A DNA stretch of 64,000 nt from Asterias rubens (taxonomy: Eukaryota), in contig NC_047062.1 of NCBI RefSeq assembly GCF_902459465.1, positions 17,236,001-17,300,000 on the forward strand, in the 5' to 3' direction. The notes beneath the pieces were generated by a model. That model was not told the origin of the DNA. It saw only the letters and a program-made list of their open reading frames with translations, and did not search any database. Numbering within the stretch: position 1 is the first letter of the stretch; each line of letters starts with the position of its first letter. Shown here piece by piece: positions 1-43,600 of the stretch. Made by a program: the position numbers and the translations under genes.

Positions 1-1165
1 CACACCTGCGTCTCCCAAGACGAACTCCGTGTTTTGTTTGAGGCGGTGGAGAAAGCTCTAAGAGGTGGGGCTTTCAAGATAGATAATGACCCTGACAATG
101 ATGATAACCTGGTGGTTTGGGATTTCCCCGGTGCCGTCTTCTTTACAACTACCGTCGTGACCACTATAGGTAAAACAAACAAAGTTATTGTTACTTACAA
201 TGTTTAAGAAAGTTAAAACCCTGTGAAAATAAANNNNNNNNNNNNNNNNNNNNNNNNNNNNNNNNNNNNNNNNNNNNNNNNNNNNNNNNNNNNNNNNNNN
301 NNNNNNNNNNNNNNNNNNNNNNNNNNNNNNNNNNNNNNNNNNNNNNNNNNNNNNNNNNNNNNNNNNNNNNNNNNNNNNNNNNNNNNNNNNNNNNNNNNNN
401 NNNNNNNNNNNNNTAACATCAACTACAACAACAACAACAACGACGAAGATGATGACACAACATACAACAAAAACAATAACATCAACACAGAAGAGCATAT
501 TTCAGACGGAATAAAATATATGATTGAATAATTTTATTTCAGGCTACGGCAATCTGGCACCGAAAACCTCGCTCGGACGTGTTGTGTGCATGTTTTATGC
601 AGTGGTAGGGATTCCACTCACTTATTGGTTACTATCAGCAGTAGGTGATACGTTCCAGGGCTGTTGGCGGCCGTGTCATGGCCTTATCAGACGGTGTACG
701 AAGAACATCAAAAACAACGCTCTTCGCACCACCCTAGAAGTAGCCATGATAGGGACAGTATTGTACGTCATTCTAGTGGCGCTGCCAGCTCTCCTCTTCA
801 GTTACCTGGAAAATTGGAACTTTTTCCAGAGTCAGTACTTCTGTTTTATCTCCTTGAGTACAATAGGATTCGGTGACTTTGTGCCCGCCGAGCAGACGGA
901 CTTGTCCCCACTGTACCGGTGGGTGTACAAACTCGGCACCGTAGCTTATCTCATAGTCGGTCTGAGCATTCTATCTGTGGCCTTTAAGGGATTCCTGAAC
1001 TCGCAACAGTCAACACTTAACAAGTGGAAGGCCAAAAAGGCGGCCAAAAAGCTGATGGAACTCCAGAAGCAACAGCCGCAGCAACATGCTTCCCCAAGCG
1101 CTACAATAGACACAAGTAACGGAGTGGTCAATACAACGGCTTGCTTCGATGACAGTTTAGACTGA
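1..1165 (+). CDS. Two-pore-domain potassium channel (K2P/KCNK family), paralog 1; 5' end lies outside the window
   Basis: Exons <1-169 and 543-1165 (phase-1 GT-AG intron 170-542, which contains the N gap). The spliced protein has a cap/P1 region WDFPGAVFFTTTVVTTIG|YGN, then TM2/TM3, P2 FISLSTIGFGD, TM4 and stop TGA at 1163-1165. Confidence 0.92.
234..413. other. Assembly gap (180 N) next to an (AAC)n-rich tract
   Basis: Run of N, followed by aac/aacaac repeats at about 415-490. Confidence 0.99.
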
Positions 1166-5228: not shown

Positions 5229-7016
5229 ATGAAACCATGGGTTAAATCCCTCGTACTTTTACCAGTCTTCCTTGGCTACATTTTCATCGGGTCCTCTTTC
5301 TTCCTTAAGATTGAGGGGCCACACCAAGTGACCGTGAGGGATGAATACTTCGACTTTCTGCGGCTGTTCGTTCAGAATAACTCGGCTTGCGGGATGTCTG
5401 TAGATGACCTTAAAGCTATACTTACTCACGTCAACGTGGCGAAAGCTGAGGGGCTGCTGCACCCCGAGACCATTTTAAATGAAGGGGTGTCCAACGTCTG
5501 GACCATGCCGAATTCCATTGTGTTTGCTTCCACGATTGTCACGACCATTGGTAAGTTTTGAAAACTGTGTGGTGTTTGCAGTAGAATGGAGAAACATTGG
5601 TTTCGAGAGTAAAAAAACAACCTGAAACTAATGACTATTTGGAAACCTATTTGTTTGGGCACTGATAATTTAAACTTATAGTTTCTTCTATGTAATGATG
5701 ACAGTTTTTCTGCAGTGGAATGTAGAAACACATTATTGGTTTCGAAAGTAAAAACCAATCTGAAACTGATGACTATTGGAAACTTATTAGTTTAGACACA
5801 GATGATTTAACCTTCGTTTCTTCTTTTTAATGATGACAGTTTTTTGCAGTGGAATGGAGAAACACAATATTGGTTTCGAGAGTAAAAACCAATCTGAAAC
5901 TGATGACTATTGGAAACTAATTAGTTTAGGCACTGATGATTTAAACTTAGTTTCTTCTTTTTAAACAAAGTAATGGTGACAGTTTTCCTGTTCGAAGTAT
6001 TTATCAGGACCATTTCCTCTAAGGTATAAACATGAATTAAATGCTCACCAGAGTATTATGAATTTCATCAAAGCTTAGCAGAGTCGCTATTTTTCTTTGT
6101 CATGCAATATTTCAAATTAGTCTTCCATTGGCAAGCATGCTTATTTAAAACATACATTTTGTGTTATCTCTGTCGTTTCACAGGATATGGCCGGTTGGTT
6201 CCTAGAACAGTTGGTGGACAAGTCTTCTGCATCATTTACGCTATATTTGGAATCCCCATGTGTTACTTCATGCTATCCGTAGTCGGCGATACCTTCCAGA
6301 GTCTCTGGCACCACTCTAAACGACTCTTCGATAAATCCCTCATCTGCATCCAAGCCAAGAAATCACGTCTGGTGATAGGTGGTCTGGTAACCTGTATCGT
6401 TATATGGACGGTTACTATTGCTCTGCCGTCTCTGGTGTTCGTGGCAACCGAACACTGGAACTTCGGTCATGCCCTGTATTTCAGTTTCATCTCAATGAGC
6501 ACCATCGGCTTCGGAGATTTCACCTTTGGGATCGAACAGAGTAAACCACTGACGACACAGCAAGACTGGATCTACAAGCTGGGTATACTGCTGTATTTCT
6601 TGATCGGTCTTAGTGTGATATCAATTGTTTACAGAGGAGTATGGCGGGCTCAACGGGCGCGATTGAAGCGGGCTGGTGCGACAACCCGTCGGTTCTTGCA
6701 GAGGGGCGGACGGTATGGAAGCTACTCCCTCGGTGCACATCCCGAGGTGTCCTCTTCGGTGGGTAGCGGTGTCCAGCTCAAAACAAGCAACGACTTGGCT
6801 GTGATTCATGAGAACTCGGAAGAAGAGGATCATATGAACGCCGCAATGGCCATGGATGCAATGGAGACGAACCGACGTCGCTCCTCTGTCTTCACAATGT
6901 CTTACACACAAGTCATGGGTTTAAACCTGGCTAACTATGACTCGGGCCATTGGTCGAACAATGACTCGCTCATAGAGGAAGAGACCAATGCAACTGTAAG
7001 CGAGCATGAATTCTAA
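5229..7016 (+). CDS. K2P channel paralog 2 (384 aa predicted, long cytoplasmic C-tail)
   Basis: Exons 5229-5550 and 6184-7016 (ATTG|gtaagt...acag|GATAT). TM1, cap Cys (SACG), P1 ASTIVTTIG|YGR, P2 FISMSTIGFGD. Confidence 0.93.
5570..5985. repeat. ~135-bp tandem repeat, about 3 copies, in the intron of K2P paralog 2
   Basis: Unit gcagtggaatggagaaac...aaccaatctgaaactgatgactattggaaac...gatgaca restarts at about 5575, 5705 and 5840. Confidence 0.85.
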
Positions 7017-14759: not shown

Positions 14760-16220
14760 ATGGGCTGCAAGAAAACACTCATTTTGTTTGTGTGTTGGAT
14801 TATTTACCTGTGTCTCGGTGCGTTGGCTTTCATCGCAATAGAGAAAGGAAACCTTGCGACGCAGCAGGAGGCACGTGCAGAGTTCAACGAGGCAGTCGCA
14901 GACTTTGCCCGCGAATACTCTTCGTGTGGAGTTACCAGAGACAGTCTGTTGACGTTCATGGTAAACAATGGACGGCACACCCAGACAAGAGGTGTGTTCC
15001 ACTTTAATGTAGATCCCTCGAAGGGGGTTCAAGAAGAATGGTCAATGACTAATGCGTTGGTCTTTACCTCCGAAATTGTTACTACCATAGGTGAGCATTT
15101 AGAAACTTTAATGGTGTCCAGAATAGCATCACACTTTCTCTCTCACTCTAGTAAAGGCTTTCTGATGTCTAAGTAGGATTTGAAACTTTGCATGGTGGAA
15201 ATACGATATGGAAATGGTTGTGGTAACATCATGTATAATGACTTCTATCTCTAATGAGTTGGGGTGGTTCTGAAAAAAACCGTTGGTTTCAACTCGACGT
15301 TTCGATCAGTATGCTTTGATCGTTTTCTGGAGAATACTTCCTCCTTTTCTCCAGAAGACGATCAGAGCATACTGATCGAAACGTCGAGTTGTTTTCAGAA
15401 CCACCCCAACTCATTGGAGATAGTCATACAGGATGTTACCGCAAACCTTTCCATATCTTTCTGATGTCAATACTTTTTATAAAGTCCTATTGTGCGGGGC
15501 AGACATTACACTCTTAAAACGCACATGGCCCAATTTCATAGAGCTGCTCAGCACAAACAAGTTCCACATATTGATCTAGTGTGTCTTCAACGAAAGTAGA
15601 ACAAGAAGATAAGAATGAATAAAAACGAAACTGTTTCCTATTCCTCTTTTAAAGGTCACGGCACGCTGACACCCTACACCGCCAGAGGGCGTCTCGCCTG
15701 CATTTTATACGCCCTCTTCGGCATACCACTCTGCGGCTTCATGCTCGCAGCCGTCGGTGACGCGGCACTCATCCTAGCCGATAAAATCGACGGAGTTTTC
15801 CGAAGGCGTCTCCGACTTGCTCTCCTAGTGAACGCTGCCCGTCTCTTCGTCATTGTATTGGTATTCTGGTCGATTACGGTGACGCTGCCAACGTTGATTT
15901 ACACCAGGACGGAGGGGTGGAACTGGGTCAAGGCACAATACTTCAGCTTCACAGGCATGAGTACAGTCGGCTTCGGAGACGTGAAGGTTAGCCTTCATAG
16001 ATACAAAGACTCAGTATTATTAGACTGGTGCTACAAAGGTGGCACAACCGTGTACTGCTTCCTCTGTCTTGGTATTGTCTCCACCGTCTTTAAGGTTATG
16101 TTTCGGTGGCACAAAAACCACATCCAGCAGACCAGAGCCAGATTCCGAACGTGGAGGCGAAAAAACTGCACTTCTAGAAGACGGTCCTCTAATTTAGCAT
16201 TCTTGAATACTCAGGACTGA
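14760..16220 (+). CDS. K2P channel paralog 3 (298 aa predicted), atypical P1 filter TIGHG
   Basis: Exons 14760-15090 and 15655-16220 (ATAG|gtgagc...aaag|GTCAC). Cap Cys (SSCG), P1 FTSEIVTTIG|HGT, P2 FTGMSTVGFGD. Confidence 0.9.
15172..15458. repeat. Inverted pair of Penelope-like repeat ends forming a long hairpin in the intron of K2P paralog 3
   Basis: The left arm (about 15172-15334) is the reverse complement of the family sequence in the right arm (15347-15458); loop tacttcctcctt. Confidence 0.85.
15349..15388 (+). ncRNA. Minimal type-I hammerhead ribozyme-like motif (U4A variant)
   Basis: CTC-CAGAAGA-C-GATCAG(agcata)CTGATC-GAAA-CG-TC^GAG: 3-bp stem I, 6-bp stem II, palindromic ACGT stem/loop III, GUC triplet. 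The sister copy at 46728 has the canonical CTGAAGA. Confidence 0.6.
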
Positions 16221-17540: not shown

Positions 17541-18231
17541 GATTATTAGGGCACCTATATGCCAGAGAGGTCAAGAGAGTGCCTTGCTCATTGACCCACC
17601 CTGTGCGCTGCGAGCGCGTAGACACGCCTTTCCACTGTTTCATTTTTGTTCTACACCAACCTCGACACATAAATATTGCCGCAGCAGAATAATACTAAAT
17701 CCTCTCTGGCTAACATGGGCTTCCAGTAATGATATTAATTAAACATACACATTCCTCGTGCATCATTTGCATATTATGCGAGCTTCAACCACACTCACAC
17801 ATTATATCAACAGGGCTTATACCAGCACCATGGGAGCAGATGGTAAATCGAGGTCACACGTAAAACAACAGGAACTAATAGGTTACCAAATCGTGTCAAT
17901 AACGGTCATTAAAATTATTTACCAGTTCTATATGTTTAAATAAAGAGAACAATCTGCCTGAGCCACGATACCACCAGCAGATGTCTGATTGTAGATTATG
18001 GTTATCGTGTATTTCGTGATCTGTCTCAAATCGGCATTTCAACTTTCAGCACCAGGGACTTGTTTGTGCAGTAGCTCTGGAGAGTGACCACTACACAATT
18101 ATAGGCAATTTTGTGATATCATGGTGGACACAATACCACGACACTAAAACTATGGACTTGTGTACACTTCTGTAAAACACTTAAACCAAACACTGCACTA
18201 ATATCAAACATTACTTTAAAAAAAAAAGCCA

Positions 18232-19528
18232 ATGGGGATACGAAGGAGGTACCGCACGATACTCGTATGCCTCGTGTTCTGGATCTACCTCGCACTTGGC
18301 GCGCTTTCCTTCATGGCCATCGAGCGGGAAGCAGACGATGCCGAGACCAAACTCTCTCGGCGGGAACTTTACCGCGCACTGCAAAACTTCAGCGAAGAGA
18401 ACCGGGAATGTAACGCCACGACGGAGAACCTCCGAGGGCTCATGGAACAGGCTGAGATAGCTTGGAAACTCCGGAGAGTATTCCGTACAGACACTGATAC
18501 TACGAAGGGTATAGAGCCGGTGTGGAACATCGCTGACTCGATGGGCTTCGCGCTGTCGATACTTACTACTTGTGGTGGGTATATCCGTTTTAGTGCCAAC
18601 CAGCGTGTTGTAGCCATTTTCTTAAAAACAAAAATCCTTTGGTTCTAAGTGATGGCTTTGGGTACAATTTTTCATACATAATAGAGCTTTTATACCGCTT
18701 TTTTTGCCGTACCATATATGGACTAACAGAGACTCCTTTCTTTCATGCTTGGGCACACTGAAACATCGAATTTGAGAGCAAACAAATAAACGGTAATTCA
18801 ATAGCCATGTCCCTTCCCTTTCGGTGTATGTGGATTGCTTTGCCATATTAAACAATGAATAATGCTTCATAATCAATTAGTTGCCAACTATGGTTTTCTA
18901 GTCTATCCACCCTTCTCATTTATCTGTAGGCTACGGCGAATTGGTACCCATTACAAAGACAGGACAACTCATCTGTATTATCTACGCAGCTGTTGGTATC
19001 CCGTTATGTTACTACATGATACTGACCGTAGGCAAGACTTTTCGAGATTTGTGGTTTGCAATGTTGAGCTCTTCTTGCCAGCGATACAAAATCCCACGGC
19101 GAATTTCATACTTCCTCGTTCCCGTCATAGCACTGTGGATAGTCTTAGTCGTCTTCCCCAGCCTGGTGCTGATACAGACGGAGGGATGGCCTCTTTTGAC
19201 GGCACTGTATTTCAGTGTCATGTCGCTCAGTACCATCGGCTTCGGAGATGTGATGCCGCGAAGACCGAACCCGTATTCTGCTTTTTCTAATACCATGAAA
19301 CTGATCTTCATATTTTATATCCTGCTCTGTCTGAGCGTCATGTCAATCACGTTTGCATGTATAGCCAGGGTGCTTAAAGAATTCAAATCAAAGAGGAGAA
19401 GGAAGCAACAAGATGCCAGTCAGCGAAGGAATACGTTGGAAACGAACATTGATTTTGATGAAGAAGTAGAACCATATCGGGTTTGTAACGGCGACTCTCC
19501 CGTAAGCTCCACTGGGTCTGACTCTTAG
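18232..19528 (+). CDS. K2P channel paralog 4 (313 aa predicted), atypical P1 filter TCGYG
   Basis: Exons 18232-18574 and 18930-19528 (TGTG|gtgggt...gtag|GCTAC). Cap Cys (RECN), P1 ALSILTTCG|YGE, P2 VMSLSTIGFGD. Confidence 0.9.
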
Positions 19529-19619
19529 GCCTAAATTCATCAGTAGTTAGCATGACGAGTTGGACCATATTGGACCAGTGTGTAAACATACCTGTGGATG
19601 CAAAGGTTTGGTCACTGAT

Positions 19620-19868
19620 CTGGGCCGAATTTCATAGAGCTGCAAAGCACAACAACTTGCTTAGCATGAAATTTATTCCTGTATTAAAACAGGATCACCA
19701 ATCAAATTTCCATTTGTTGCATTTTGCTTGATAATACTGTCATCATCTGTTGATTGTTGTTCCTGAAAATCACGTGGAAATTTGGTTGGTAATCCTGTTT
19801 TAATTAAGGAAGAAATTTCTGGCTAAGCAAATTTGTGTGCTTAGCAGCTCTATGAAATTTGGCCCTGG
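19620..19868. mobile_element. ~250-bp Harbinger-like MITE (GGGCC termini)
   Basis: TIR gggccgaatttcatagagctgc / gcagctctatgaaatttggccc. Relatives at about 15527, 21133-21305, 59660-59770 and 63680. Confidence 0.75.
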
Positions 19869-20343
19869 CAGGTTTGTCCTACTTAGACCTTCAATTGAAT
19901 TTATAAACATGTATGGTTGTCTAGACACCAACTTGTCTAGCCAAATGGCTTGAGACTAAGGAGATGAAAGTAGGTATGGCAAGACCAAGACCAGGGATTG
20001 GCCTCAAATTCTTCAAAAGCAGTTTTGCTATCACATCGCTAATATTAAAGATGCTATGTCAGATTTTTGGCCGATTTGACCCAAAAGATTTTGATTTAAA
20101 ATTCAATAAGTATTTTGATGAAAGTTACAAGCTTTCATTTGAGCCATTGCTCAAAAAAACTCCGCCAATTATTAGTAGCAGTGAAATAAAGTGCTCAAAA
20201 TTAGTTTTTATCGGGATCCCGACAGTGTATATCACGTGACCAATTCTTATGTGTTTTATAAGAAACGTTTTAAATTTTTGTCACGGTTCCTGACCGTTAA
20301 AAGTAAAAGTTAAACTTGTTTTCGTTAGAGCGGGTGATACTCT

Positions 20344-20729
20344 TTAAAGGCAGTGGACACTATTGGTAATTACTCGAATTAATTATTAGCATAAAACCTT
20401 TCTTGGTGACGAGTAAAGGATAGAGGTTGATGGTTTAAAACATTGTGAGAAACGGCTCCCTCTGAAGTGCCATAGTTTTCGAGAAAGAAGTAATTTTCCA
20501 CGAATTTGATTTCGAGACCTCAGATTTAGAACTTGAGGTCTCCAAATCAACCATATAAACGCACACAAGTTCGTGTGACAAGAGTGTTTTTTCCTTTAAT
20601 TATTATCTCGCAAGTTTGATGACCGATTGAGCTCAAATTTTCACAGGTTTGTTATTTTATGCATATGTTGAGATACACCAATTGTAAGGCTAGACTTTGA
20701 CAATTACCAATAGCGTCCACTGCCTTTAA
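20344..20729. mobile_element. Kolobok/T2-like MITE, reference full-length copy
   Basis: TTAA|AGGCAGTGGACACTATTGGTAATT ... AATTACCAATAGCGTCCACTGCCT|TTAA. A TTAA TSD with purine-purine termini is the Kolobok signature. Confidence 0.88.
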
Positions 20730-22906
20730 AATACCATTCACTCTAAAATAAATCTATTTTTTAATGTTTGGGGCAAAAAATCTGACATAGCATCTTTAAT
20801 GACTTATACCACAAGTTGGAATGTTTTCTCTGAAAGAAGAATAAACATGCATGTAATTCCAAAGATTTTATTAAAATAAAAGACACATAAATCATTGAAT
20901 CTCTGTCAGAACAAAAAATCTCGCTTTTATTTTGTTTCATTTATGTGTGTTTTCATGCAAAGATAAACGTGCACAGTGAGTGACTTTGAATGGACTGAAA
21001 TGATTGAGGCTATACGGTGTAACAAGCATGGGTTAGATCTAGTTCAACAAAATGGATGAACATCGACTGGAAAATGTTTGTGATTATCTCAGAAATCTGG
21101 CTAAGATAAAACATGTTACTCGTTCAGACCATGACCCAATTTCATAGAGCTGCTTAGCAGAACAAGTTTTGCTTAGTAGAAACAAATTACTCCTGTATGT
21201 ACATTGTTTGTGACTGATTCCCTGCTAAGTTTTGCTTAGCAGAAAACAGTAATAACAATTGCTAAGCACTTTTTTTTGCTTCACAGCTTTATGAAAATTA
21301 GGTCCAGTGTGGTTGATTTCCGAGTAGTTAAGCAGATAAATTTGCTAAGCACAGATACATTTTATACAGGATACCGGCTAAAATGTCACTCATGCAATGT
21401 ATCTTGTTTGTAACTGGTTCCCTTTTTTATTTTTGCTTAGCAGAACATGGTGGTAAAGTTTTGGAAGAATCTCTTTCCCTTTCTCAAATGAAACAATTGA
21501 TAGAACAATCCTTCATTAGCATGAGAATTTAAAACTACTGAATGAGATTTCAAAGTTACTTGTTGTACGTTCCTAGATTGTTTTCCTGTCTGGCCTTTTT
21601 AGTTGCTCTTGATTTGAACCTTAGCTGTAAGACCTTAACCTCCTCATCTCATACTGATCAGTTGGGAAAGAGTTTTTCTTGTAAAACTACTATTCATTTT
21701 AACGACATCAAAACATAATCAAATAATTGTCCAACATGTGAAAGGGAGGGTATACCTTTGGTAATTACTCTAAAAACTATAGACCATAAAAATATACCCT
21801 TTACCGGTACTTGATGAGAGAGCTGTAATTAATGTAGTTTTAGAGAAAGAGATTTTTCAGCCAAAAAATTTGAATCTGAGAAAGGCTTCAGGCCACTCTA
21901 TGCAACGAGGTGGGGTTTTTGTCACTACTTTCGTGCAACTTCGGTTACTACTGATTCACTCCAGGAGTCAAAATTTTCACTGGTTTGTTGGGATACACAA
22001 AATATAGGAACAATAATTCCTTCTTTTTCGAGAGTAATAAAGTTTCTTAGGGCTCATGTCTAAATGGATACTGGTCTTTGACAATTTCCAAAAGTATACC
22101 CTGCCTATAAGATAAAGTGATGGTGAATAATTTGGGTCTCTTTAAATTTGGATCACAACAATTATTGTCGGGCCTTTTTTTTCTCGTAAAACTCAGTATC
22201 TGTGTTTGCTTTTGACCCCTAGCCTATGATGTCACAAGCTAAAACAGCGCCCTCATTTATTGAAATGTAGACCTTTTATTTGCTAATTAGAGATGTGGGT
22301 AGGTGCAAACAAGCGAGCATGTTTCCATCGTTTGACCTCACTAATGGCGGCAGTCTTTTAGAGATGGAGCACCAAGAAAGATGTGTACAATGTCAACTTG
22401 ATTGAATCAAACAGTCCACCCATTTAAATCATTCAAATCATTGTTATCAAACAAACAAATGAGACTGAAGTGGAAAAATAGTCAGGTCCCTTTTCTGTGT
22501 ATAATGACGCCAGCCTTCATTTGTGCTTTTATACGCAAGGAACAAGACAGTAAAGGCAGCAGCAACGGCCAAATTTGCTGTCATTAACCATAGTTTGACT
22601 ACCATTGCCCAAACTCTGTGTAGTTTGACTACGCTAGTCGACTATTTGGAACCAACCTACCGGTCATGGTCGCATCACTGGTTACCAACAGCCGTTTTCT
22701 TAGCACAGCACAGAGTGGACCAGTTATAACAAAATGATAACGTGTCATGCGTTTAAGTCGAATGTCGTGCTGATGACATGACTACAGTCATTCACACTAC
22801 AACTTCTGTGCACATGCCCCCTTCGCACGTCACTAAACAATTAATCATTGATCCTTGCGCGAACTTGACCGTGATGGACATGCAATGTTTATGAGTTATC
22901 ATCATT

Positions 22907-25900
22907 TCACCACTCCCACTCGTAGTCACTCTCCGAGCTGTCGCTCTCCGTCCAGCTCTCCGATGAGCTCGAAGAGTCGAACGAGCCACTGCAAAAGCAC
23001 TGTCTATCCTTGACGATCACCACTGGTACGATTAAAACGTTCACTGCAGTGTTCGGAAACTGCTTCCCAAGCATCTCCGTCAGCGCCTTGACTTTATCGC
23101 TCTTGACTGCTTTTTCCGTGGTGACGTTGTAAGGGTAGAACTTCTCAGGTACGTTATAGGTGATGATGGGCACCCCCCAAATCAAAGTACGGAGACTGTG
23201 GAGGTTTGCAAGAGTTCGGCACTTTTCAGAGTTTGTTTGAATCAGCTGTTTTGGAGAGAAAAAAAACATTTTATTTTCATTTCATTTTATTTTAGTCGCC
23301 AGCAAACAGTCATAAAATACATTGAACATTTGCAAATCAAATGATCTACGGGAACAAACAATACAAGAAGACTTATGTTGACTTATTGTGAAGGCCAACT
23401 TGGACACTATACTAGCCAAGAACTCAATGGAGAGAATTGTCTTCTCTCCACAAAGAAGAAAACCCCAGAGAACTGTTCCAGAAAAAAAAACATGCAATCA
23501 TCTTGGGACTGAAAACAGAATACAAGCAGTGCCCCCAGCAGAATTCGAACCAGAGTCCTAGAGGTGGAAGGGCATGGAAGGAACCACTACGTGCTAGGCC
23601 AACCCAAACGTATAAACCAGACCACCAAGGAGGGAAAATAAATATAATTTAAAGAGGCTAATCATCCTTACTCGCAGCTTAGAGCTGAATTGTGAAAGAG
23701 CGGCTAAAACATGTTCGAGAAGCAGGCATGCAAGGGCGCCTTTGGCAGCCAGCCATATCAACCCATTATGACCATGGCGCACAGCCAGAGATCAAAGTGT
23801 TTGATTTTTCCCCAGGGAGGAAAACCGGATGGTCTGGAAAACCCTCGTGGCACAACAGAGAACCAACGAACAACTCAACTCACATATGGCCCTGGCCAGG
23901 AATCAAACCAGAAGCAAGCACTTGACGCACAAGCCAACCATGCCCCCAAAGAAATAAAAAGCATTAGTTTGCACTCACCCCAGCACTACATACTGTTGGA
24001 CACGGTCCTTGAGTGTAACCTCGCAAGCTGGCCGTGGGCCAAAATGTCAAAGAGGAAAGTTTGAGTAGACTCGTCAGGGCAGGGTTGATATCGCTTGGCA
24101 TTCTGTACATTATCAACTCCAACTTCTCCAACCTAATGGAACATCAGAACAAACTTAATTTATTTGTATCTCTTATATCTTTAATACACTAATTTATTTT
24201 TAATACACTAATTTATTAGTAACTATTTTGTATTGCCCAGTCTCACTCATGCATAACATGTCCATGTTTCCATTTTTTGTGTGTACGTAACGGTATCCAT
24301 TTCTTTAAATACGTTTCTTTTGTCTTTGTCTTTACATGGAATGAGAACAAAAAGCATTTGCTTCTTCTTTTTCCTAAATGTTAATGTCACATTATCATCT
24401 ATTTATTTTTCAATAACTGGATCAAGTTTTAATTTGTACAGGTTATTATATGTTTAACCAAGCAACTCATTCATGTATCTAAAATGAAAAAATTGAAATT
24501 ATCTAGGGTGTTATGGTCGAGTGGTTTAGAGCAAGGAATTTTAGTGGTTAAGTCATCGGAGTGTGGGTTCCTTGGGCAAGATGCTTTGTTTACTATAATT
24601 GATTCTCTTCACCCATGGGTATAGTTGGGCACCTATGGCGGTAGAGTTTGATATTGTGAATGAAAAAGCCTTTGGAGCACCACGGCACCTCAGGGCTGTA
24701 GACTCCCCAGGGAGCTGAGAAATATTAAAGGAATGTTATTGGCCCATTGACCAGGGCACTAATGTTACGCGCATTGATACAGTTATATTAAAAAACTGGC
24801 ACTACTCACTCTTTCAGCTTGCTCAGAGTCTCTGAGATATTACATGTACAGATATATAGTCCGTTAGCCAATGAATCGCCCTTACACCAGCAGCCTCCGT
24901 TCTCTAGTCTTAAACTGCGCAGTCTGGTCAGCTTGCCCAAGATCTTATACACCTGCAAGATGGCCAAAGACATACGTCGTGCATGTAAAAAAATTGTGTC
25001 AACTGAGAACTTCTGATAGTTCTCTATTATAATTAAAGTGAGGGCATTATTGTCTTTTTGTTTTAGTTCTTGATTTGAGTAAATAAGCATTATTTAGGTC
25101 CAGATTTTACTTTGTTTTGTACTAGAATTTATACATTGTACTTTTTTTCTGAGTTGCCTGGCTTGGTTGATGGTGGATAATGCACTTCCTTCTTGGGGAG
25201 TGTGTATTTGGTCTGTTGTTGTGGTTTTGAGAACCAAATGGTCAGCCACTTCGAAAGAGACTTTTTGTTAGGTATCAATGTATATTTGGTTTGCGGTAAC
25301 ACCATGCGTATATCTACTTGCTGTCCAGATTATGTTCTTTTGGAAACATGTCTTGCTATATATTCTACTCCGGGGAGTACATTTTTCTACTTTCTATATT
25401 CATACAACCTCAGTCCTCCAGTTCCCACAGTCGCCCAGTTCCAGTTCCCTCAGTTCAGGAAGTCTGGTCAAGAACTCGTAGTCCAGCGGGCAAATGCGAT
25501 TCTCATCAAGACTTGTCAGCGACTGCAGAAAAAAAATTGTTTGAAAAGATTTTGAACTTTAAAAAAAAAAACATGGATGAGATATCAACCTGACACAGTC
25601 CAAATAAATTATCTTTTTTTTCCAGGAAAATATTCTTATTCATCAAAGGAATCTTCAAATGTCAGAAAAAGTTGTTAAAGCAAGGCCCATTTAAAATATA
25701 ATGAACATAAATAGTTGATTGATAACTGAAACTTGTCGTAAACATAACATCGAAAATGCCACCGTAGCCTGGTTGGTAGCACATGGCAATTATCTGTGAG
25801 GTCTCTTACCAGCTTCTGCAAGTGTTGTAGCTTTCCCAGGCTTGCAAGCCCATCAGAAAATGACATATGAGGCAGTGCCAAGCTGTTGATGGAGCGAATC

Positions 25901-28900
25901 TTCAACACTCGCAATTGGGACAGTTTGCTCAGCTTTCCAAGGTCAAAGGTTACGTTGGGCCTGCAGGAAAAAACAAAACAACGATAGTGTTTTTTTTAAT
26001 ACAGCACGGAAGGACCACACTGAAAGAGTCTACCAAATACCTTGTCCAGGATTGATCAGAAAACAGTGTACTGAATTCTACATTGGAGAGATAGAAATGG
26101 TCCCACAAGACTAGGTTATTGGAGCACCATGCCCCAGTTTGTCCTTTTCCGAGGGTTCTCAACACATCCGTATAGAATCACCAGGTCATCACACAGACAT
26201 TTCAAAAGTAAAAATCTTAAACAGAAACCCTTGTGATGCTTCAAAAGGGGTGAAGAAGGCAGCTTTCATCAGAACCAACTTTAAGGTTTGGAAATATTTC
26301 AAGTGTTAAAACACCAACTGTATTGTAATGGTGTTTCAGTTTGGGTGAAAAAGATCACAGGGTTTCCAGATTCGGATTCCCTTGTCCATTTGGGAAATGA
26401 TTATACTAATCAGGGTAAGCAGATGCTCATAGTTGTAATTGTCCCCTAGTTTCCTCATTGGGGATCAATTTTACCCTCATCGAGGTAAGGGTTACCAAAC
26501 AGGGTAGGCATATACCTCAAGAGGGAGAGTTGTGGTGCCAAGATGCTCATGATGTTGTTGTCCAATAGTTTCGCATTGGGGATTGGTGATACCCTCATCA
26601 AGGGAGGCCAAATAGGGTAGGAGTATACCCCAATCTGGAGTTTAACTAACCTCTTTGAGAACATTCCTTCCAGCCAGTGTACTTGCAGAACTCTTAAGTC
26701 TGGTAGACACTGTGGGACCTGACTGATGACGGAGGTGGAAGCGTGGCCAAAGTGAAGGTACTGCAGCTGAGGAAGTCTCTTGATTATAGAGTAGATGTCC
26801 CTCATGTAAACGCTTCTAGTAAACTCCATCATCGTGTTGTTGTAAAAATCCTAAAAGATGGATGATTTTCATGGACAACTATAAAGATCATGGACAATTA
26901 TAAAGATAAAGAAAATGGGCAAACACATGGCCTTATAATTAATAATAAGAATAATAATAATAGCGACTTCTTTTATAGCCCTAATATATCCATCACTCAG
27001 TGACGCTCAAGGTGCTTCAATATTCAGTATTTTCCTGCAAGGTATTTTAGAGCTTTGTTTTGAAGTATGAGACCAACATGGTATTATTGATTCTTTTTTG
27101 GTCTTTTTCTTTTTTATCTAAGAGGAAATTGCCTCATTTTAAACAGATGACCAGGTTAAAACAGATATCTCCATGAACAAGTCGCACAAACTAATGATTC
27201 TCAGTGTGATGTACATTGTTTCCGCAAGGTCAAGTAGAGAGAAGTTGAATTCAAAGTTCTTTATTACTATAAGCCTGCTTTGATTGACTTACCAATGCAA
27301 TGGTTCCACGTGCTTGAAAGATTTTGACAGCTTTTGGATAGTCCTTCACTTGTGTACCTTCCAGACTCACGTTCTTCCACTGCAAAATGTAGTAAACAAA
27401 TAAATATATTAATTTTGGTTTTTACCCATACACCGATGTGTGTTAGCACTGTATACTCAGTTCTTTCCCGAGTCCTATGAAAAAATATCACAGGCAAGTT
27501 ACTCGGGTGGGATTCGAACCCACGACCCTTGCAATTCTAGAGCAGTGTCTTACCAACTAGACTACCGAGGTTGCCCGGCAGCTAGAGGCAGTTCGAATCC
27601 TATGTTTTGGCAGCGGGTACCGCAACGATATAATAGATGTTAAATTTGCATCGGGGATAAAGAATATTAATTTTGGTTTTTACCCATACACCGATGTGTG
27701 TTAGCACTGTATACTCAGTACTTTCCCGAGTCCTGTGAAAAAATATCACAGGCATGTTACTCGGGTGGGATTCGAACCCACGACCCTTGCAATTCTAGAG
27801 CAGTGTCTTACCAACTAGACTACCGAGGTTGCCCGGCAGCTAGAGGCAGTTCGAATCCTATGTTTTTGGCAGCGGGTACCGCAACGATATAATAGATGTT
27901 AAATTTAACATCTATTATTAGAATTGCAAGGGTCGTGGGTTCGAATCCCACCCGAGTAACATGCCTGTGATATTTTTTCACAGGACTCGGGAAAGTACTG
28001 AGTATACAGTGCTAACACACATCGGTGTATGGGTAAAAACCAAAATTAATATTCTTTATCCCCGATGCAAATTTAACATCTATTACAAATAAATATAGAT
28101 TAAATTACAGCATTGATTTCTGTGTGTGCTCCATCTTATCTGTTCCTTTCGAAGATGCATACTCATGTTGAGTCTGAGTCCGAGTCTTTAGTGTTGACTT
28201 TGAGTCTGATTCCTTGGTGTCGAGTCCGAGTCCGACTTCTCAGTCTCTAGTCTGAGTCCAGGTCCTCAGTGTCAACTTTGAGTCCGAGTCCTCAGTTGCG
28301 AGTTTCAGTCTGCACCCTCATCTTGATTCTGAGTATCCCACCCTTTACTGTTGACTTTGAGTCTGAGTTTTCAGTGTCAAGTTTCTGTCTGATCCCTAAG
28401 TCTCAATCTCAGTCTGAACCCTCAGTCTCAAGTCCGAGTCCGAGTTTTTAGTGTTGACTTTGAGTTTGAGTCCTCAGTGTAGAGTCTCAGTCGGCACCCT
28501 CATCTTGAGTCTGAGTACCGCCTCTTAAGTGTTGACTTTGACTCCGGATTCTCTCAGTGTCCAGTGTAAGTCTCAAGTTTCAGTCTCAACCCTCAGTCTC
28601 CATGCAGTCTGACTGCTTATAACTTGCTTTCTTTAAAAAACTAAAAAACCCAATGTACAATAATTTTAAAAATGACCAAAGTTTACAAACCAAGCTTTTA
28701 TCTGTAGACAGCTGGTTCCACATTCTGCAAACTAAGCCGACCCTCAATAGGTCACTCGCAGAGAGGTAGTTGAAGATCCTAAGCAGACAGTATTGAGGCA
28801 GTGCACTGATGTGATCACTGCCGTACACACTTGGATCATTGGTAGAGGTTGACGAGGCACCATTGGATGAACGTGTTTTCACCTGAATAGGTCAATAACA

Positions 28901-28954
28901 TCAAAGTATAAATGACTGATGGCATCTTAATAAATGGAATGAAAAAAAAAAAAA

Positions 28955-28990
<36 letters not shown>

Positions 28991-29924
28991 TTGTTAAGGG
29001 AATCAAATAGTGGGGACACTGCCTTAAGTGGCTGTTTAAAACCGGCCTGCTGCACCAGGGTTGTACTATGTGGTCGTGTGAGTAAACAAAAGATTTCCCC
29101 CCCAAAAAAAATTATAATAAAAAAATCAGATTCAACTCAATTATCGGATTGATGGTTAAGAACTCTTACCAACTGTCAGCAAAGAAAATCAGGGAGGAAA
29201 TCAGGTCATAAAGAGTGTCCTACCACAAGCCGGTTCTTTTACTCACTTTTGACTTGGTTTTCTTTCCCTTTTTTGATTTTGCTTTTTTGGTCTTGGTAGT
29301 CACTTCCGATCTGTGTGGGGGCTGTGGCTGAGCTTTGTATCTACAGACATGTGAAGAGTTTTATTTCATGTTATAATGTTATATTATGTCTTTCATAAAT
29401 CACATCAGAAAATAGTAAATTTAAACCTCTCTCATGGTTCAACTCAACTTTTTTGAGGTGCATCCATAAACTCTGATACATTATCATACACATGTTTTTT
29501 TAAATTTGCTGGAAGTCAATACTCGTCTTTCACAATAACAGTGGTACGCTGGCTACAAGCCAGTTAAAACAGACAGTGGACCAGTCAGAATTCAATCCAA
29601 ATGCTTCGGACGACTAGTTCAGTGTTGAAAAGCATCCCGATTTAATACGCAATTTAAATGATCAAGTCCAAAAGACAACAAACCAGTGACATGAAAAGCT
29701 GATTTCTCTCTCAACCCTACCCTGAAGATTTTTTGCTTGAGCTTATGAATTAAACAATCTTTGCATCTGTAATAAAACAATTACATCTTTACACTTTACC
29801 TATAACTAAGGCTTGCCCAGGGAATAATTCTCTGGTTCGGCTCAACAACTTCTGGTTCAAGTGGAGCAAGACAGGAGATCTGAGGTTTGGAGTGAGACGC
29901 TGAAAACAGCTCCCTGTTGGCCAT
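22907..29924 (-). CDS. F-box/leucine-rich-repeat protein (FBXL-type, about 532 aa predicted)
   Basis: Exons 29924-29800, 29340-29247, 28882-28691, 27379-27293, 26850-26651, 25960-25810, 25522-25409, 24952-24810 (alternative acceptor 25012), 24132-23979 and 23245-22907 join in frame. F-box LPQYCLLRIFNYLSASDLLRVGLVCRMWNQLSTDKSLW, LRR-like LxxLxxLxxLxL repeats, a Lys-rich N-terminal patch and an acidic Ser-rich C-tail. Confidence 0.82.
24506..24790 (+). mobile_element. SINE family B copy (intronic)
   Basis: Similar to 7061-7445. Confidence 0.6.
27409..28084. mobile_element. tRNA-mimic 258-bp repeat family: tandem dimer plus inverted partial unit, one insertion
   Basis: Period 258 bp (27424 vs 27682). 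Inversion junction is the 26-bp perfect palindrome at 27891-27916. 13-bp TSD acaaataaatata (27396-27408 / 28085-28097). Confidence 0.88.
28160..28610. repeat. Degenerate low-complexity repeat (gagtcc/tgagtc; gtgttgactttgagt units) in an F-box gene intron
   Basis: gttgactttgagt recurs at about 28192, 28350, 28452 and 28530; caccctcatcttga occurs twice, about 180 bp apart. Confidence 0.7.
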
Positions 29925-30445
29925 TATTTGTGATACAGATGGAGGGGCTCCTCTCTATGGGGTGGAGGTTGAAACGTCTTAATAAAGTCTTCCAAACTCT
30001 GTTTCTCTGATGATGAGGCCCAACAATTACTTACAGACGAACCTGTGACAGAAGAATTTATTAATTTAAAGTTGAAAGTTAAAATTAAACTTAAAAGTAC
30101 CACCATTTAAGAGGAAAGAAACCATTAAAATACTCAATATTCAATATTGTTTTGCACGCCATACTAGCTTCTGAATATTCAATAAAATACCAACCAATGA
30201 AAGGTTTGAAAACATATGACGCCGCTCCAATGTCGTACATGCATTGGCACTGTAAATTTAGTGTAAATAGTGGATTATCTCTCGCAACAGAAAAACAAAC
30301 CTGTAAAGATTTCAACACACTATGAAGTCACTGTAAGTGTAAGTGTCATTGTAAAAAAGTTGGATAGATGATTTTTGTTTAAATCGTTTAGTTTTTGATT
30401 GTGAATAATTTGCCTGTTATCCTACTGAAAACACATGACACCAGG

Positions 30446-30507
30446 TAGCCCCACTTGTGTGGCCAAGGATAGCTGAATCCGAATCCTTGGCCACACAAGT
30501 GGGGCTA
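30446..30507. mobile_element. 62-bp hairpin mini-transposon with 25-bp perfect TIR and 9-bp TSD
   Basis: tagccccacttgtgtggccaaggat / atccttggccacacaagtggggcta; gacaccagg on both sides (30437-30445, 30508-30516). Confidence 0.85.
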
Positions 30508-30871
30508 GACACCAGGATACATGTACTAGACTAGAGTAGTACTATATAGGCCTAGTTAGTTGCAAATCATAAATTTGTTTTTGCATAATTTGGTCAGAAT
30601 TAATGAATTAATATTTACCGATTCACGAAATGATTCTCGGGTCATGTTCAAATGGTGCAAGCGGATCAAGTCATGGAATCTGAGGTTTTATAAGCGGGTT
30701 TATTGGGCATCAACAACAATCTGTCACTTGTTTTGCAGTTCAGTGGGCGCTTCCATGTTATTGTTTTTTTGATAACAAAAACATTCTCGTTCTCACACTC
30801 GGTACATTTCTGTTTCGTGGGGGTGATGAAATTCAGTGCACAAAAAAAACGAGGTTGAAATGGACAATGGC

Positions 30872-30900
30872 TGGGGCGGGGCGGGCCGGAAAAGGGGGGT
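30872..30900. promoter_or_regulatory. GC-box cluster in the divergent F-box/TFB2M intergenic region (candidate bidirectional promoter)
   Basis: ggggcggggcgggcc between head-to-head genes. TSS not determinable from sequence. Confidence 0.35.
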
Positions 30901-32297
30901 TGGAGAAAATAATTACTGGAAAGAAGGATTGTATGTTTCACCGGTTGTAACTTTTTTAGATAGTTCTTCTCCACACAAAAGAGCATTTTTTTTGTACAAA
31001 AACTAATTGATAAGTTTATTTGCAACCCCCCCTCCTTCCCAGGCAACGCCTCTCCTTGACATCTCGTATCGTATCATGTCGTATGGAGAGCAAAGGTCAC
31101 GCACGGGTAGGGAAAATCGACCGGCTCTGCAGAATTAAAATGAACGAACGCATGATTTAAAACAGCAAGGTAAGCCGGTTTAAGAGAAAGCAATAGGACT
31201 CCTAGGAGTACAATGTACCTTTATGATTATTTTCTTTTTTTAATTGGTGCTTTCTGGTGAAACTTTGCTTCGTAGGGCCTAGGTTAGGTAGGTTTAACAT
31301 AGGTAGTGATCATAATCATTCATAGTGTGTGTGCCCAGATTGCGGACAGTCACACACGGTCTGGCTGGAGGCTATTCCTACTTTTTTGTGATTCCATGTT
31401 TTTTTACGTCAGATGTATTATTAGTTGTGACTGAGTCCGTCCATGAACCATCATCATGATCATCCTGGGCCTACCAACAAACCGCGAATCCCCAATACAA
31501 AAAATAAATATTAATAAAAAATTAATATTAAATTTATAATATAAATTATTATTAATATTATTAAATTTCACATTCGATGATCCAGCCACCATTTTGTCTC
31601 CATTATTTAATTTCAAATTAAACCTTACTTTAAAAAGTTACAAATTAATTGGGCAAGTTACTGACACTACTGAGTAGACGTGTGTGCAAGAGAGTTCCAC
31701 GATAATAATGTGCATATTTTAATTACATATGGCCCATTTCAAATGTGCTTTTTCAGTCACTCGGCCCAGCTGCTCTTATCTAATGCAAGACCACTGAGAT
31801 GGGGTCGCTGATGAGCTTGTACAAATTCTTGTTCAGGACAGTAGGATAAATACATGTACAGACCATAGTCTAGTAGTGATGCATGATGGGAGTGAGCCCA
31901 TTTAGCCCAATTGTTGTGCGTGATACCGAGTGCTGATTCATTGAAATTTGGGTTATAAAAGATCGGTGCTTGACCCAACTAATGCTGAATTAAATTTAAA
32001 CAATTTGTATTTATTGCTATCTTCCCAGGTCCTGAGAAAAATGGGGTTTCCAACTTGTGAAGGAGCTCACTGTGAGGTTGATATATCTTAGAATGAGTGA
32101 AGAGTTTTAAACAAGATACATGTAGTGAAAGGTTTTACTCATCAAGGACAATATTTTACTTACTCATTCGAATCATGGAAACATGCACTGATGACGCAAA
32201 GCATTCGTTCATGGAAGCATACACCAACAACGCAAAGCTCTGAAAGTTGATGAAGTGGTTTTGAAGTCTTTTGTTGTTCTAGCTGTAAGACTCGGCC

Positions 32298-40611: not shown

Positions 40612-43600
40612 TCAGAGTTTCTTGGTAGAACTGGCTGGAACCATCACTCTGAAAATTAATGTAAATATTGAAGGTTAGAACATGTCGGCAAACGAATCAT
40701 TGTGGTTTCAGCTCCTAAACTATGGGTTTGGAAGCGTACCTGGCACCAGGCCTCTAGGTACCAGGCAAGCTCGGTGGTCTAGTGTTTAGACATCTGCTCT
40801 AGCGTGATATTGGGTTCGAATCCCACCCGAAAAATAAGCCTTTGGAATGTTTTTTCAATAGTAATTCTCTCCCCGTCCCCCAACCGATTGGAACGCAGAA
40901 GACCATGCAATGAAAGCCAACATTGAAAGGGGGGGCACAGGGGCCCAACGAGATATGGCCGGGATAATAGCTGAATGCTAGAAATAAATCAACTGGAATA
41001 AGGCAGAGTGTTTGTGTTTTTTAGAACTGTTCGCATACCTTACTCCTCTGGTGTCATTCCGGATGTTTCTGTTTCATCCTCCATGAAGGGTTCATACGTC
41101 GGTGCCGTCTCGCATGAGTCCAAGAAACGATTCCACTTCTCTCCCGGTTTGCAGCATGTGTTGAACGAGTCCGGAGTCAACCACGTCTTGGCCAGGATCC
41201 TCTCGTTACAGCATACTTCCTCTGAGGAATCGTAAGCCGTCTGGTTACAGCAACGCCCGTAGGCTACACCGACCGTCACGGCGCTCCAAATCACAGCGGT
41301 ACCGTTGTTACTAGATGAGATGCCCTGGCAGCAAGTTGCATTCTCTGGTCTGTACAGAAGGCTTTGGCAGCATTGATAGTCATCCGTTACGTTTTCTTGG
41401 GCTCTGAGAACGTTGCATTCTTCTTCAGATATTTCTGGGTACTCTGTGCTGTCGGGAACAGTGCTTGTCTCATATGAAGAGATTGTGGTCACTCTTGTCG
41501 TTGATAGCTCATCAGGCTGCTCTGCGATTCTGGGAATGACTGTTTCAGATTCGCCGCAGTACTCTGAGCTGAGATTGTAGAGCTGGTCACCACAGCAACC
41601 ATGTTGAAGCCGATCGTAGATGACTCCTCCGCACAGTGGCCTCAGGGTTGCGTTTACAGTTGGCTGGGTACCATCACTGATCTCAGAATCCTGGTCAGCC
41701 GATGGAGAAACTATTTCATCACAATATTCAGTGGTGCGGTTGAACACAATCACTCCACAACATCCGTGAGTGGAGGGATTGTAGGCGATGCCATCACAGA
41801 TTCCCCCGATCAGTCCGCCCATGCAGGTCTCATTGGTTAGCTTGTATAGAGTACCATGACAGCAGCCCTGAGTGTTGGGATCGTAAGCCAGACCATTACA
41901 CACCACCCCTGTTGTCTTGGTAGCATCTCTCGGCATCATACGCTCCAGATGAGGTGTCCTCCCGTCAGCATTCGTGGTCGTTTCGATGCCCAGCTCCATG
42001 GCGTCTGTTCCGTTTCCGGCAACCCTTTGGGCGTGCTCCGTCTGCCTGGCATAAATCCTATGAGTCGTGTCTTCAAGACCTCTAGTTTGGATATCTGCGT
42101 CTTGAAGACCCCTAGTTTGGATGTCTGTGTCTGGGCATTGTTGTTCTCCCTTGTTGATGACGACACCGTTGCAGCATTCTTGCCATTTGGATTGGCGTGA
42201 GACGGAAGCATTTCCACAGCAGATGACACGACGGGCGTCACGTATGATGTTATTGCAGCATATTGTGTGGTCTCCATAGTCTCTTGCCTGAAGAGGAGAA
42301 GAACAAAAAATCATACTGAAACATTGCCCCTTACTTCCTTGGTTCACTTGCCTACAGGTGACCTCGATCCTGTAATATTCTCCTGTGTCACTCCACACCA
42401 TTATGTTTGGACTTGGATAAGATTGGAATGCCTGACTCAGCGATGAGCAATTCTTGGTTGGGCCTACAACCCTAAGTCCTTTCAGAATCAATTTGATGCA
42501 TCCTTTTAAGAATGATCCATCAGAGTTGTAAACAATGTGTTTCATCAGTGTATAATGCAGGCCAGGAATATGTAGACCAGGCTTTGCATTTTGCAAAGGG
42601 CACTTCCATTGGAAAATCTTAAAGTCAAGGGGAAACTTTTGAAGGGGCACCAAGGCCAAGACCAGGGGCAACTGAGGCCATGGCGTGCATGTATTTCGAG
42701 GCATGTAGTGTTTTGGGCAGAATCAAATGCTAGTATCAGTTTCTACATACCTGAATTCTACCATTGCAGCAAATCTCCTGTGACGGGTCCCTCACAACCC
42801 CTTGCCCGCAGCACTCCCCATCGGTAATAAACTTATGCAGCATTCCCTGGCAGCAGGTGTGGAGCGTCTCATCGTAGCCATCGCTCCCTCCGCAGCAGGA
42901 TTGTCCACTGGTCCTCAGTAGGGCAAACTGATGCCCGGCCGTACTACAGCACTGACGCTCGGTTGTGTCAATAGCCTGGTTACCACAGCACTGTAGCGTG
43001 GGGGCGTCGGTGTACAGGGAGTCGCCACAGCAGAGTGGCGAGGGTTGAGATGCTGGGTCGTAAGCCACCCTACCACAGCAGTGAGTTCCATGATCAACCT
43101 TGGAATACCTGCCAGTAAACAAAGTAAACGCTCATAAATAAATAAACTCCAGTAGAAACAAATTATTTCTGAGCTTTAAAAAAAAATTATGTTTTAGTAA
43201 GGGTTGTTACTTTTGATGGTACATGATTATCGTTTAAGCGAAATGTTGAGGCTGTTTTTCAAAATTACACAGATACCTGTGGTGCACTAGTGTATCCAAG
43301 AAGATCGGATTTTGCATTGGAACTGTGAGTTGGATGAGTGCTTTGGTTTTACTTTGTTTCTGATCTACATTAGCCTTTTTGAGATATGGCGGACACTAAA
43401 GGAGTGCACTGTTTGGTTTGGGTGTATACATGCAATTTTATCTGTCCTAGCATTGTGTGCATTACGAAGGTATTTCAGACTTACATGTGGCCGTCGCAGC
43501 ATATCGTGGTATCGTTTATGATGGACCTTCCACAGCAGTCTCCGTTAGCTACACCATACAGCACTCCATTGCAAACTGTCTCTATTGGACTGTGTGCAAC

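What the first reader, a model, noticed from the sequence alone, without database searches (positions are those of the whole stretch)
18560..18945. K2P paralog 4 has a TCGYG filter: candidate sodium-permeable, depolarising K2P outside nematodes
Seen: P1 is L-T-T-C-G|Y-G-E (TGT at 18571-18573) in an otherwise intact 313-aa ORF with a canonical P2. Established: this is the TxGYG x position, where TWIK-1 has Thr118 instead of Ile and gains Na+ permeability. From recall, a filter cysteine underlies the constitutive Na+ permeability reported for C. elegans UNC-58. Inference: convergent evolution of an excitatory leak channel in another phylum, adjacent to canonical paralogs it could heterodimerise with.
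Basis: partly seen in the sequence, partly recalled or inferred. Interest (0 to 1): 0.8.

Follow-up and report, generated by a model that had tools for sequence, protein, structure and literature searches.

The report
Starfish K2P channel with cysteine filter
A leak potassium-channel gene of the starfish Asterias rubens carries a cysteine in its ion-selectivity filter, the rare change that lets the worm channel UNC-58 leak sodium; it arose independently in starfish, and whether this channel also passes sodium has not been tested.

Summary
The window is Asterias rubens. The gene has two exons (18232-18574 and 18930-19528) and encodes 313 aa. Its first pore filter reads T-T-C-G-Y-G-E, with TGT at 18571-18573. 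The second filter is the canonical TIGFGD.

- **Splice junction:** RNA contigs of a sister species, whose differences match A. amurensis, join 18574 to 18930 exactly and keep the TGT. The junction lies in the Gly codon, as in all paralogs and orthologs.
- **Conservation:** The A. amurensis genome and protein model carry the same TGT codon. Between the two species there are 13 synonymous and 6 nonsynonymous changes (pN/pS about 0.14, P = 4e-5). The gene is therefore expressed and constrained.
- **Origin:** The Acanthaster and Patiria orthologs (100/100 clade, same gene order) have TIGYG with codon ATA. The Cys is therefore derived in the Asterias lineage and arose independently of nematode UNC-58.
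- **Rarity:** Among 275 K2P relatives fetched, only the two Asterias proteins have TCGYG.
- **Homologous position:** The Cys aligns with the Ile of TTIGYG in solved TRAAK and TASK-2 structures.

Sodium permeability remains an inference. UNC-58 C266I and TWK-18 I>C support it; Shaker TCGYG stayed selective. I call this a new, convergent member of a known kind, of moderate interest. The scan's own earlier notes cover only this same window.

The parts
18232..18574 (+). Exon 1 of K2P paralog 4: Met1, M1 helix, cap helices (cap Cys60 at 18409-18411, followed by an N-A-T sequon), pore helix 1, and T112-T113-C114 plus the first base of Gly115
   Evidence: ORF and translation. RNA contig X1 covers 18100-18573 and runs further 5'. 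The A. amurensis 312-aa model starts at the same Met. AF2 model helices are H3-56, H64-79 and H100-112.
18571..18573 (+). TGT = Cys114, the x position of the TxGYG filter of pore 1 (SF1)
   Evidence: Unchanged in sister-species RNA and in the A. amurensis genome L002. Aligns with the Ile of TTIGYG in 4rue (TRAAK) and 6wlv (TASK-2). The valvatid orthologs have ATA, Ile.
18575..18929 (+). Phase-1 intron (355 nt, GT..AG) that splits the first Gly codon of GYG
   Evidence: Joint 18574>18930 in RNA contigs X1 and X2. All three other window paralogs and the Acanthaster genes have the same intron position and phase, and the Patiria ortholog has the same donor position.
18930..19528 (+). Exon 2: rest of Gly115, Y116-G117-E118, M2, M3, pore helix 2, SF2, M4, basic/acidic C-tail, and the stop at 19526-19528
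   Evidence: 100% identical to P0001. Two Ion_trans_2 stretches in Pfam.
19232..19249 (+). SF2 filter T-I-G-F-G-D (canonical)
   Evidence: T216, G218 and G220 are invariant columns; F219 and D221 are nearly invariant.
14760..16220 (+). Upstream neighbour paralog 3 (exons 14760-15090 and 15655-16220) with SF1 = TIGHG
   Evidence: Its orthologs read TIGHG in A. amurensis, TIGQG in Acanthaster and TIGEG in Patiria.
5229..7016 (+). Paralog 2 (exons 5229-5550 and 6184-7016) with canonical SF1 = TIGYG
543..1165 (+). Paralog 1, exon 2 only (starts inside G-YGN). Its exon 1 was not found in the window.

Best explanation
Paralog 4 is a real, expressed, selectively constrained two-pore-domain (K2P) leak-channel subunit of Asterias. 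It is the last gene of an old asteroid tandem cluster whose nearest vertebrate relatives are the TALK group (KCNK5/16/17). In the Asterias lineage, the hydrophobic residue behind the S2/S3 ion sites of pore 1 changed from Ile (ATA) to Cys (TGT). This gives the same TCGYG filter as C. elegans UNC-58, by independent descent. A homodimer would carry two such strands facing each other. The most likely consequence, which is inferred and not shown, is a less rigid filter with weakened K+ over Na+ selectivity. That would give a mixed cation leak that pulls the membrane potential in the depolarising direction, the more so because echinoderm body fluid is close to sea water in Na+ (established physiology, not tested here). 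Shown: gene structure, splice junction, Cys position, conservation in two species, derived state, purifying selection, K2P fold. Inferred: altered selectivity and any physiological role. The confidence given is for the whole statement including the inferred loss of selectivity; the shown parts alone are above 0.9.
For: Gene, junction and Cys. Two pore domains in Pfam. AF2 model with pLDDT 86.3 and pTM 0.79 and the K2P element order. Foldseek top hits are TWIK-1 3ukm (TMt 0.80) and TRAAK 3um7 (0.78-0.81). Cys114 aligns with the Ile of TTIGYG in TRAAK and TASK-2. A. amurensis has the same TGT in an independent genome assembly and protein model. There are 13 synonymous and 6 nonsynonymous changes plus one in-frame 3-nt deletion; pN/pS is 0.14 and binomial P = 4e-5. 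Orthology to the Ile-bearing Acanthaster P0009 has 100/100 support. Patiria P0160 is 73% identical to P0009 and also has Ile. Gene order is conserved. In UNC-58, TCGYG C266 contributes to Na+ permeability (C266I shifts Erev from -2 to -20 mV), and TWK-18 I>C loses K+ selectivity: PMC11513965.
Against: No electrophysiology exists for this protein. In UNC-58, C266I did not restore full K+ selectivity, so other residues contribute there. Shaker with TCGYG did not conduct Na+. No rate acceleration marks a functional shift: Tajima counts are 29 vs 29 and 27 vs 25. The only A. rubens RNA run laid covered just the 3' end at low depth, so expression in A. rubens itself is only weakly documented. The wider survey is limited to 275 relatives.
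Confidence: 0.45

Rival explanations
1. The channel is still K+-selective. Cys is a tolerated small hydrophobic replacement for Ile/Val whose side chain points away from the pore, and it has at most subtle effects on gating or filter stability.
For: Shaker TVGYG>TCGYG did not conduct Na+. The rest of both filters is canonical: T112, T113, G115, Y116, G117 and TIGFGD. The gene evolves at the same rate as its orthologs and as paralog 2: 46.8% vs 48.1% identity to Acanthaster, with symmetric Tajima counts.
Against: In the one K2P tested with the engineered change (TWK-18 I>C), K+ selectivity fell. UNC-58 C266I moved Erev towards EK. The position is I or V in 62 of 64 aligned relatives, which indicates strong constraint that this lineage escaped through a three-base codon change.
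Confidence: 0.33
2. It is a poorly conducting or silent subunit on its own. It acts mainly as a modulator in heterodimers with other K2P subunits, for example cluster neighbours, and tunes their selectivity or conductance.
For: The cluster holds several subunits with unorthodox SF1 (TIGHG/TIGQG/TIGEG next door). Pore helix 1 of paralog 4 has Gly at position 105, where most relatives have Phe (39 of 64).
Against: There is no evidence of co-expression or assembly. Everything needed for a homodimeric pore is present, including the cap Cys and an intact SF2.
Confidence: 0.15
3. It is an artefact or a decaying gene: an assembly or sequencing error at the codon, a wrong splice model, or a pseudogene.
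For: NCBI's A. rubens model is N-terminally short (it starts at Met28). A. rubens RNA coverage is thin.
Against: The same TGT occurs in the window, in another DNA run with zero differences (X9), in the A. amurensis genome and in A. amurensis-like RNA contigs. The spliced full-length ORF is intact in two species, with pN/pS 0.14 and P = 4e-5.
Confidence: 0.03

Closest known systems
C. elegans UNC-58 (K2P, SF1 = TCGYG, C266; Andrini et al. 2024, PMC11513965)
   Same: The filter motif is identical, with Cys at the second position of TxGYG in pore 1. Both are K2P subunits with an ordinary second filter context.
   Different: They are not orthologous. The starfish Cys replaced an Ile still present in the Acanthaster and Patiria orthologs, so the origin is independent. 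The starfish gene sits in an echinoderm cluster whose best vertebrate hits are KCNK5/16/17. Na+ permeability and a depolarising role are shown for UNC-58 only. I did not have the UNC-58 sequence, so the comparison is at motif level.
Vertebrate TALK subfamily: TASK-2/KCNK5, TALK-1/KCNK16, TALK-2/KCNK17
   Same: These are the best-scoring vertebrate relatives, and TASK-2 6wlv is among the top solved-structure hits. The starfish protein has a Lys at the column of TASK-2 Arg224, read from the HMMER alignment. That this Arg is the external pH sensor is from my own knowledge of the literature.
   Different: Identity is only about 30-35%. Vertebrate members have TIGYG in SF1. Alkaline activation has not been tested here.
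Human TWIK-1/KCNK1 (SF1 = TTGYG, Thr118)
   Same: It carries a non-hydrophobic residue at the same x position, and that residue is linked to conditional Na+ permeability. It is the top Foldseek match of the model (3ukm).
   Different: The residue is Thr, not Cys. TWIK-1 loses selectivity only at low pH or low external K+. It belongs to a different subfamily.
Shaker Kv channel mutant TVGYG>TCGYG
   Same: It has the same substitution at the same filter position.
   Different: It is a tetramer with four Cys strands, and it stayed K+-selective (as cited). This is the main precedent against the Na+-leak reading.

Membership tests
K2P (two-pore-domain potassium channel, KCNK) family | Two pore (P-loop) domains in one subunit | tested here: met
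   Pfam Ion_trans_2 matches with E = 1.5e-27 in two stretches. SF1 is TTCGYG and SF2 is TIGFGD.
K2P (two-pore-domain potassium channel, KCNK) family | M1 - cap helices - P1 - M2 - M3 - P2 - M4 fold | tested here: met
   The AF2 model of the 98%-identical A. amurensis ortholog has pLDDT 86.3 and pTM 0.79, with helices in that order. Foldseek top hits are all K2P structures: TWIK-1 TMt 0.80, TRAAK 0.78-0.81.
K2P (two-pore-domain potassium channel, KCNK) family | Cap-apex cysteine for the intersubunit disulfide | tested here: inconclusive
   Cys60 lies between the two cap helices (H3-56 and H64-79), and the consensus of the 64-sequence alignment has a Cys in this loop. A dimer was not modelled.
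K2P (two-pore-domain potassium channel, KCNK) family | K+-selective leak conductance | not testable with these tools
   This needs electrophysiology.
UNC-58-like Na+-permeable K2P | Cys at the second position of TxGYG in SF1 | tested here: met
   The UNC-58 motif is taken from PMC11513965.
UNC-58-like Na+-permeable K2P | Common descent with UNC-58 (orthology) | tested here: not met
   The nearest relatives are asteroid cluster genes. The orthologs in Acanthaster and Patiria have Ile, so the Cys is a later, independent change. UNC-58 itself was not in the tree.
UNC-58-like Na+-permeable K2P | Constitutive Na+ permeability and a depolarising effect | not testable with these tools
   No functional data exist. 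The reading rests on analogy only.
TALK subfamily (KCNK5/16/17) | Closest sequence relationship to KCNK5/16/17 | tested here: inconclusive
   Best vertebrate hits of the Acanthaster ortholog are KCNK16/KCNK5 at E about 1e-26 to 1e-28 and 29-35% identity. No tree with all vertebrate subfamilies was built.
TALK subfamily (KCNK5/16/17) | Basic external pH-sensor residue at the start of M4 (TASK-2 R224) and alkaline activation | tested here: inconclusive
   A Lys aligns with the TASK-2 residue in the HMMER alignment and is kept in most cluster members. Function is untested, and the sensor's identity is from recall.

The most novel reading that the evidence does not exclude
A deuterostome has independently evolved a constitutively Na+-permeable, depolarising K2P channel through the same Ile>Cys filter change as nematode UNC-58. 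This would show that the Cys is a repeatable evolutionary route from an inhibitory K+ leak to an excitatory cation leak. It would also supply natural Ile-bearing orthologs (Acanthaster, Patiria) as built-in controls.
Probability: 0.4. Interest if true: 0.7.

Novelty: new member of a known kind. Interest (0 to 1): 0.45.

Why it matters
The UNC-58 study called its filter cysteine unique among more than 60 K2P channels and found none in other K+ channel classes. It also stressed that the effect of filter variants cannot yet be predicted. A second, independently evolved TCGYG K2P gives a clean natural experiment on whether the Cys is enough to relax K+ selectivity in a K2P background. The experiment is available because this gene is constrained by selection, lies in a different subfamily and phylum, and has close Ile-bearing orthologs. 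If it does relax selectivity, starfish have an excitatory leak channel derived from an inhibitory one. If it does not, UNC-58's behaviour depends on other residues. Either answer is obtainable with routine oocyte recordings.

Tried and rejected
1. **Accelerated evolution on the Asterias branch.** The ML tree gave 0.79 vs 0.34 for Asterias vs Acanthaster. Tajima relative-rate counts are symmetric (29/29, 27/25, 26/22), and identity to Acanthaster is like that of paralog 2 (46.8% vs 48.1%). No acceleration is claimed.
2. **Alternative donors.** An exon end at 18571 or at 18578 either deletes a filter Gly or breaks the frame. Neither appears in RNA.
3. **Other forcipulatid orthologs to date the change.** Word-based searches with exon 2 and exon 1 found only the Asterias cluster. 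The 50%-cluster search hides relatives that are closer than 50% identity to the query. Dating therefore stays at 'after the split from Valvatida, before the A. rubens / A. amurensis split'.
4. **Downstream synteny with Acanthaster.** The abhydrolase gene is not in the window. Asterias instead has an F-box/LRR gene downstream. Upstream gene order is conserved.
5. **Literature.** No other TCGYG K2P and no starfish K2P physiology turned up in the held library.
6. **Direct alignment with UNC-58.** No tool gave me its sequence, so position homology rests on the motif and on the solved K2P structures.

Full report
**What is there.** The window is from Asterias rubens. Exon 2 of the gene is 100% identical to NCBI XP_033637789.1, 'potassium channel subfamily K member 5-like [Asterias rubens]'. 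The gene has two exons. Exon 1 runs 18232-18574 and ends ...ACT ACT TGT G|GTGGGT. The intron is 18575-18929. Exon 2 starts at 18930 with GC TAC GGC GAA and runs to the stop at 19526-19528. The two other GT dinucleotides nearby would delete a filter Gly or break the frame.

**Splice junction and transcription.** RNA-derived contigs were laid on 18100-19650. A 1395-nt contig (run X1) and a second contig (X2), both from a sister species, join 18574 to 18930 (GT..AG). They show no base change in the TGT codon. They run at least 130 nt upstream of the ATG, and X1 runs further still. The six amino-acid differences and the one-codon deletion in these contigs are exactly those of A. amurensis XP_071792324.1 (312 aa, starts at Met1, TTCGYGE). 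The sister species is therefore almost certainly A. amurensis. The A. amurensis genome assembly has the same ACT ACT TGT G|GTGGGTAT. A DNA run labelled as another organism (X9) matches the window with no differences across the codon. The only A. rubens RNA run laid (X4) covered just the 3' end, so expression in A. rubens itself is thinly documented. NCBI's A. rubens model starts at Met28 and lacks most of M1. The ORF from 18232, the A. amurensis model and the paralogs all support the longer start.

**Constraint.** Between the two Asterias species the CDS has 13 synonymous and 6 nonsynonymous changes plus one in-frame 3-nt deletion in the acidic tail. That gives pS 0.059, pN 0.008 and a ratio of 0.14. 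The chance of six or fewer nonsynonymous changes out of 19 under neutrality is 4e-5. Intron and flanks differ by about 4-5% in aligned columns and carry indels. This is a working gene, not a decaying copy.

**Family and fold.**
- Pfam finds two Ion_trans_2 stretches.
- PDB sequence hits are all K2P channels: TRAAK, TASK-2, TREK, TWIK. In the printed alignments, Cys114 lies under the Ile of TTIGYG in TRAAK 4rue and TASK-2 6wlv.
- An AF2 model of the A. amurensis protein has pLDDT 86.3 and pTM 0.79. It shows M1, two cap helices, pore helix 1, M2, M3, pore helix 2 and M4 in order.
- Its best structural matches are TWIK-1 and TRAAK.
- The best vertebrate sequence relatives of the orthologous Acanthaster protein are KCNK16 and KCNK5. 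The cluster is therefore TALK-like, although I did not build a tree with all subfamilies.
- A Lys lies at the column of TASK-2 Arg224. Its role as a pH sensor is from recall and is only a lead.

**Origin of the Cys.** A HMMER scan of 1.84 billion cluster representatives gave Acanthaster planci XP_022103790.1 (P0009, 49% identity) as by far the closest outside protein. A search with P0009 added Patiria miniata P0160, which is 73% identical to P0009. Both read V-V-T-T-I-G-Y-G-D. In an ML tree of 46 proteins, the two Asterias proteins and P0009 form a 100/100 clade, separate from the clades of paralogs 1, 2 and 3.

Gene order agrees. In all four species the paralog-4 gene directly follows another K2P gene; this neighbour is the paralog-3-like one (SF1 TIGHG / TIGQG) in A. 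rubens, A. amurensis and Acanthaster, and in Patiria an unexamined 322-aa K2P gene with the TIGEG gene P0015 lying one further upstream. The intron splits the same Gly codon in phase 1 in the A. rubens, A. amurensis and Acanthaster copies examined, and the Patiria ortholog has the same donor position. The codon is ATA in Acanthaster and Patiria and TGT in both Asterias species. All three bases differ, which implies at least two amino-acid-changing steps.

The Cys is thus derived in the lineage leading to Asterias. It arose after the split from Valvatida and before the A. rubens / A. amurensis split, and it is independent of nematode UNC-58. I could not find other forcipulatid orthologs to narrow the date.

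**Rarity.** In a 64-sequence alignment the column holds I57, V5, M1 and C1. Among the filter motifs of 275 fetched K2P relatives, TCGYG occurs only in the two Asterias proteins. The held literature has no TCGYG K2P other than UNC-58. This is not a full census of metazoan K2Ps.

**What it probably does.** The UNC-58 paper (PMC11513965) reports the following:
- UNC-58 has TCGYG with C266 and is constitutively Na+-permeable and depolarising.
- C266I shifts Erev from about -2 to -20 mV and halves the shift seen on Na+ removal.
- TWK-18 with the engineered I>C loses K+ selectivity.
- C266I does not restore full selectivity.
- Shaker with TCGYG did not conduct Na+.

By analogy, the starfish homodimer would have two Cys-bearing SF1 strands at the S2/S3 level. 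Weakened K+ selectivity is the single most likely outcome. With sea-water-like Na+ outside the cells (established echinoderm physiology), even a modest PNa/PK would depolarise. I put this at about 0.45, a still-selective channel at about 0.33, a mainly modulatory or silent subunit at about 0.15, and an artefact or pseudogene at about 0.03. I found no rate acceleration that would mark a functional shift.

**Other lineage-specific changes near the filter.** These could matter:
- Gly105, where most relatives have Phe and the valvatid orthologs have Ala.
- Ile110 and Leu111 in place of Val-Val.
- Glu118 in place of Asp.
- GFGD-VM in place of GFGD-EQ after SF2.

**Verdict.** This is a new, convergent member of a known kind (K2P with TCGYG), directly testable and of moderate interest. 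Earlier notes of this scan (s1-178739, s1-178695) concern the same window and were checked here only as far as stated.

Noticed in passing
window 14760-15090 + 15655-16220; L002 5583-7086; L001 3853-6464; P0015: The gene just upstream (paralog 3) has lost the filter tyrosine. SF1 reads TIGHG in A. rubens and A. amurensis, TIGQG in Acanthaster and TIGEG in Patiria. This is a more radical filter change than the Cys, it is kept as 'not Tyr' across asteroids, and the residue itself varies.
   Followed up: partly
window 18077-18106 joined to 18927-18932 (run X2, loose end): One contig of the sister species joins the 5' UTR (...CACAATTA) to the start of exon 2 through a shared TAGGC, skipping the coding part of exon 1. 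The boundary has no GT..AG. It is probably a template-switch or assembly artefact, but a rare non-coding isoform is not excluded.
   Followed up: no
window 19615-19860, also about 15520-15560: A short repeated element (...TTTCATAGAGCTGC...) lies just 3' of paralog 4 and in the intron of paralog 3. Summed word depth in every RNA and DNA run jumps to 18,000-155,000 at 19608-19650, so it is a very abundant, transcribed genome-wide repeat.
   Followed up: no
window 18232-18312 vs P0001: The RefSeq model for A. rubens (XP_033637789.1, 286 aa) starts at Met28 and lacks most of the M1 helix. The A. amurensis model and the ORF support a start at 18232 (313 aa).
   Followed up: yes
window 41040-42704 (-): A 554-aa single-exon ORF rich in CC/GCC motifs matches Pfam Galaxin_repeat (E = 1.9e-18, three stretches). 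It is a galaxin-like secreted Cys-rich protein.
   Followed up: partly
window 19562-31074 vs L002 11300-21267: The region downstream of paralog 4 is collinear with A. amurensis at about 87-91% identity. In A. amurensis it carries an F-box/LRR gene on the minus strand. The valvatid species instead have an alpha/beta-hydrolase gene there.
   Followed up: partly
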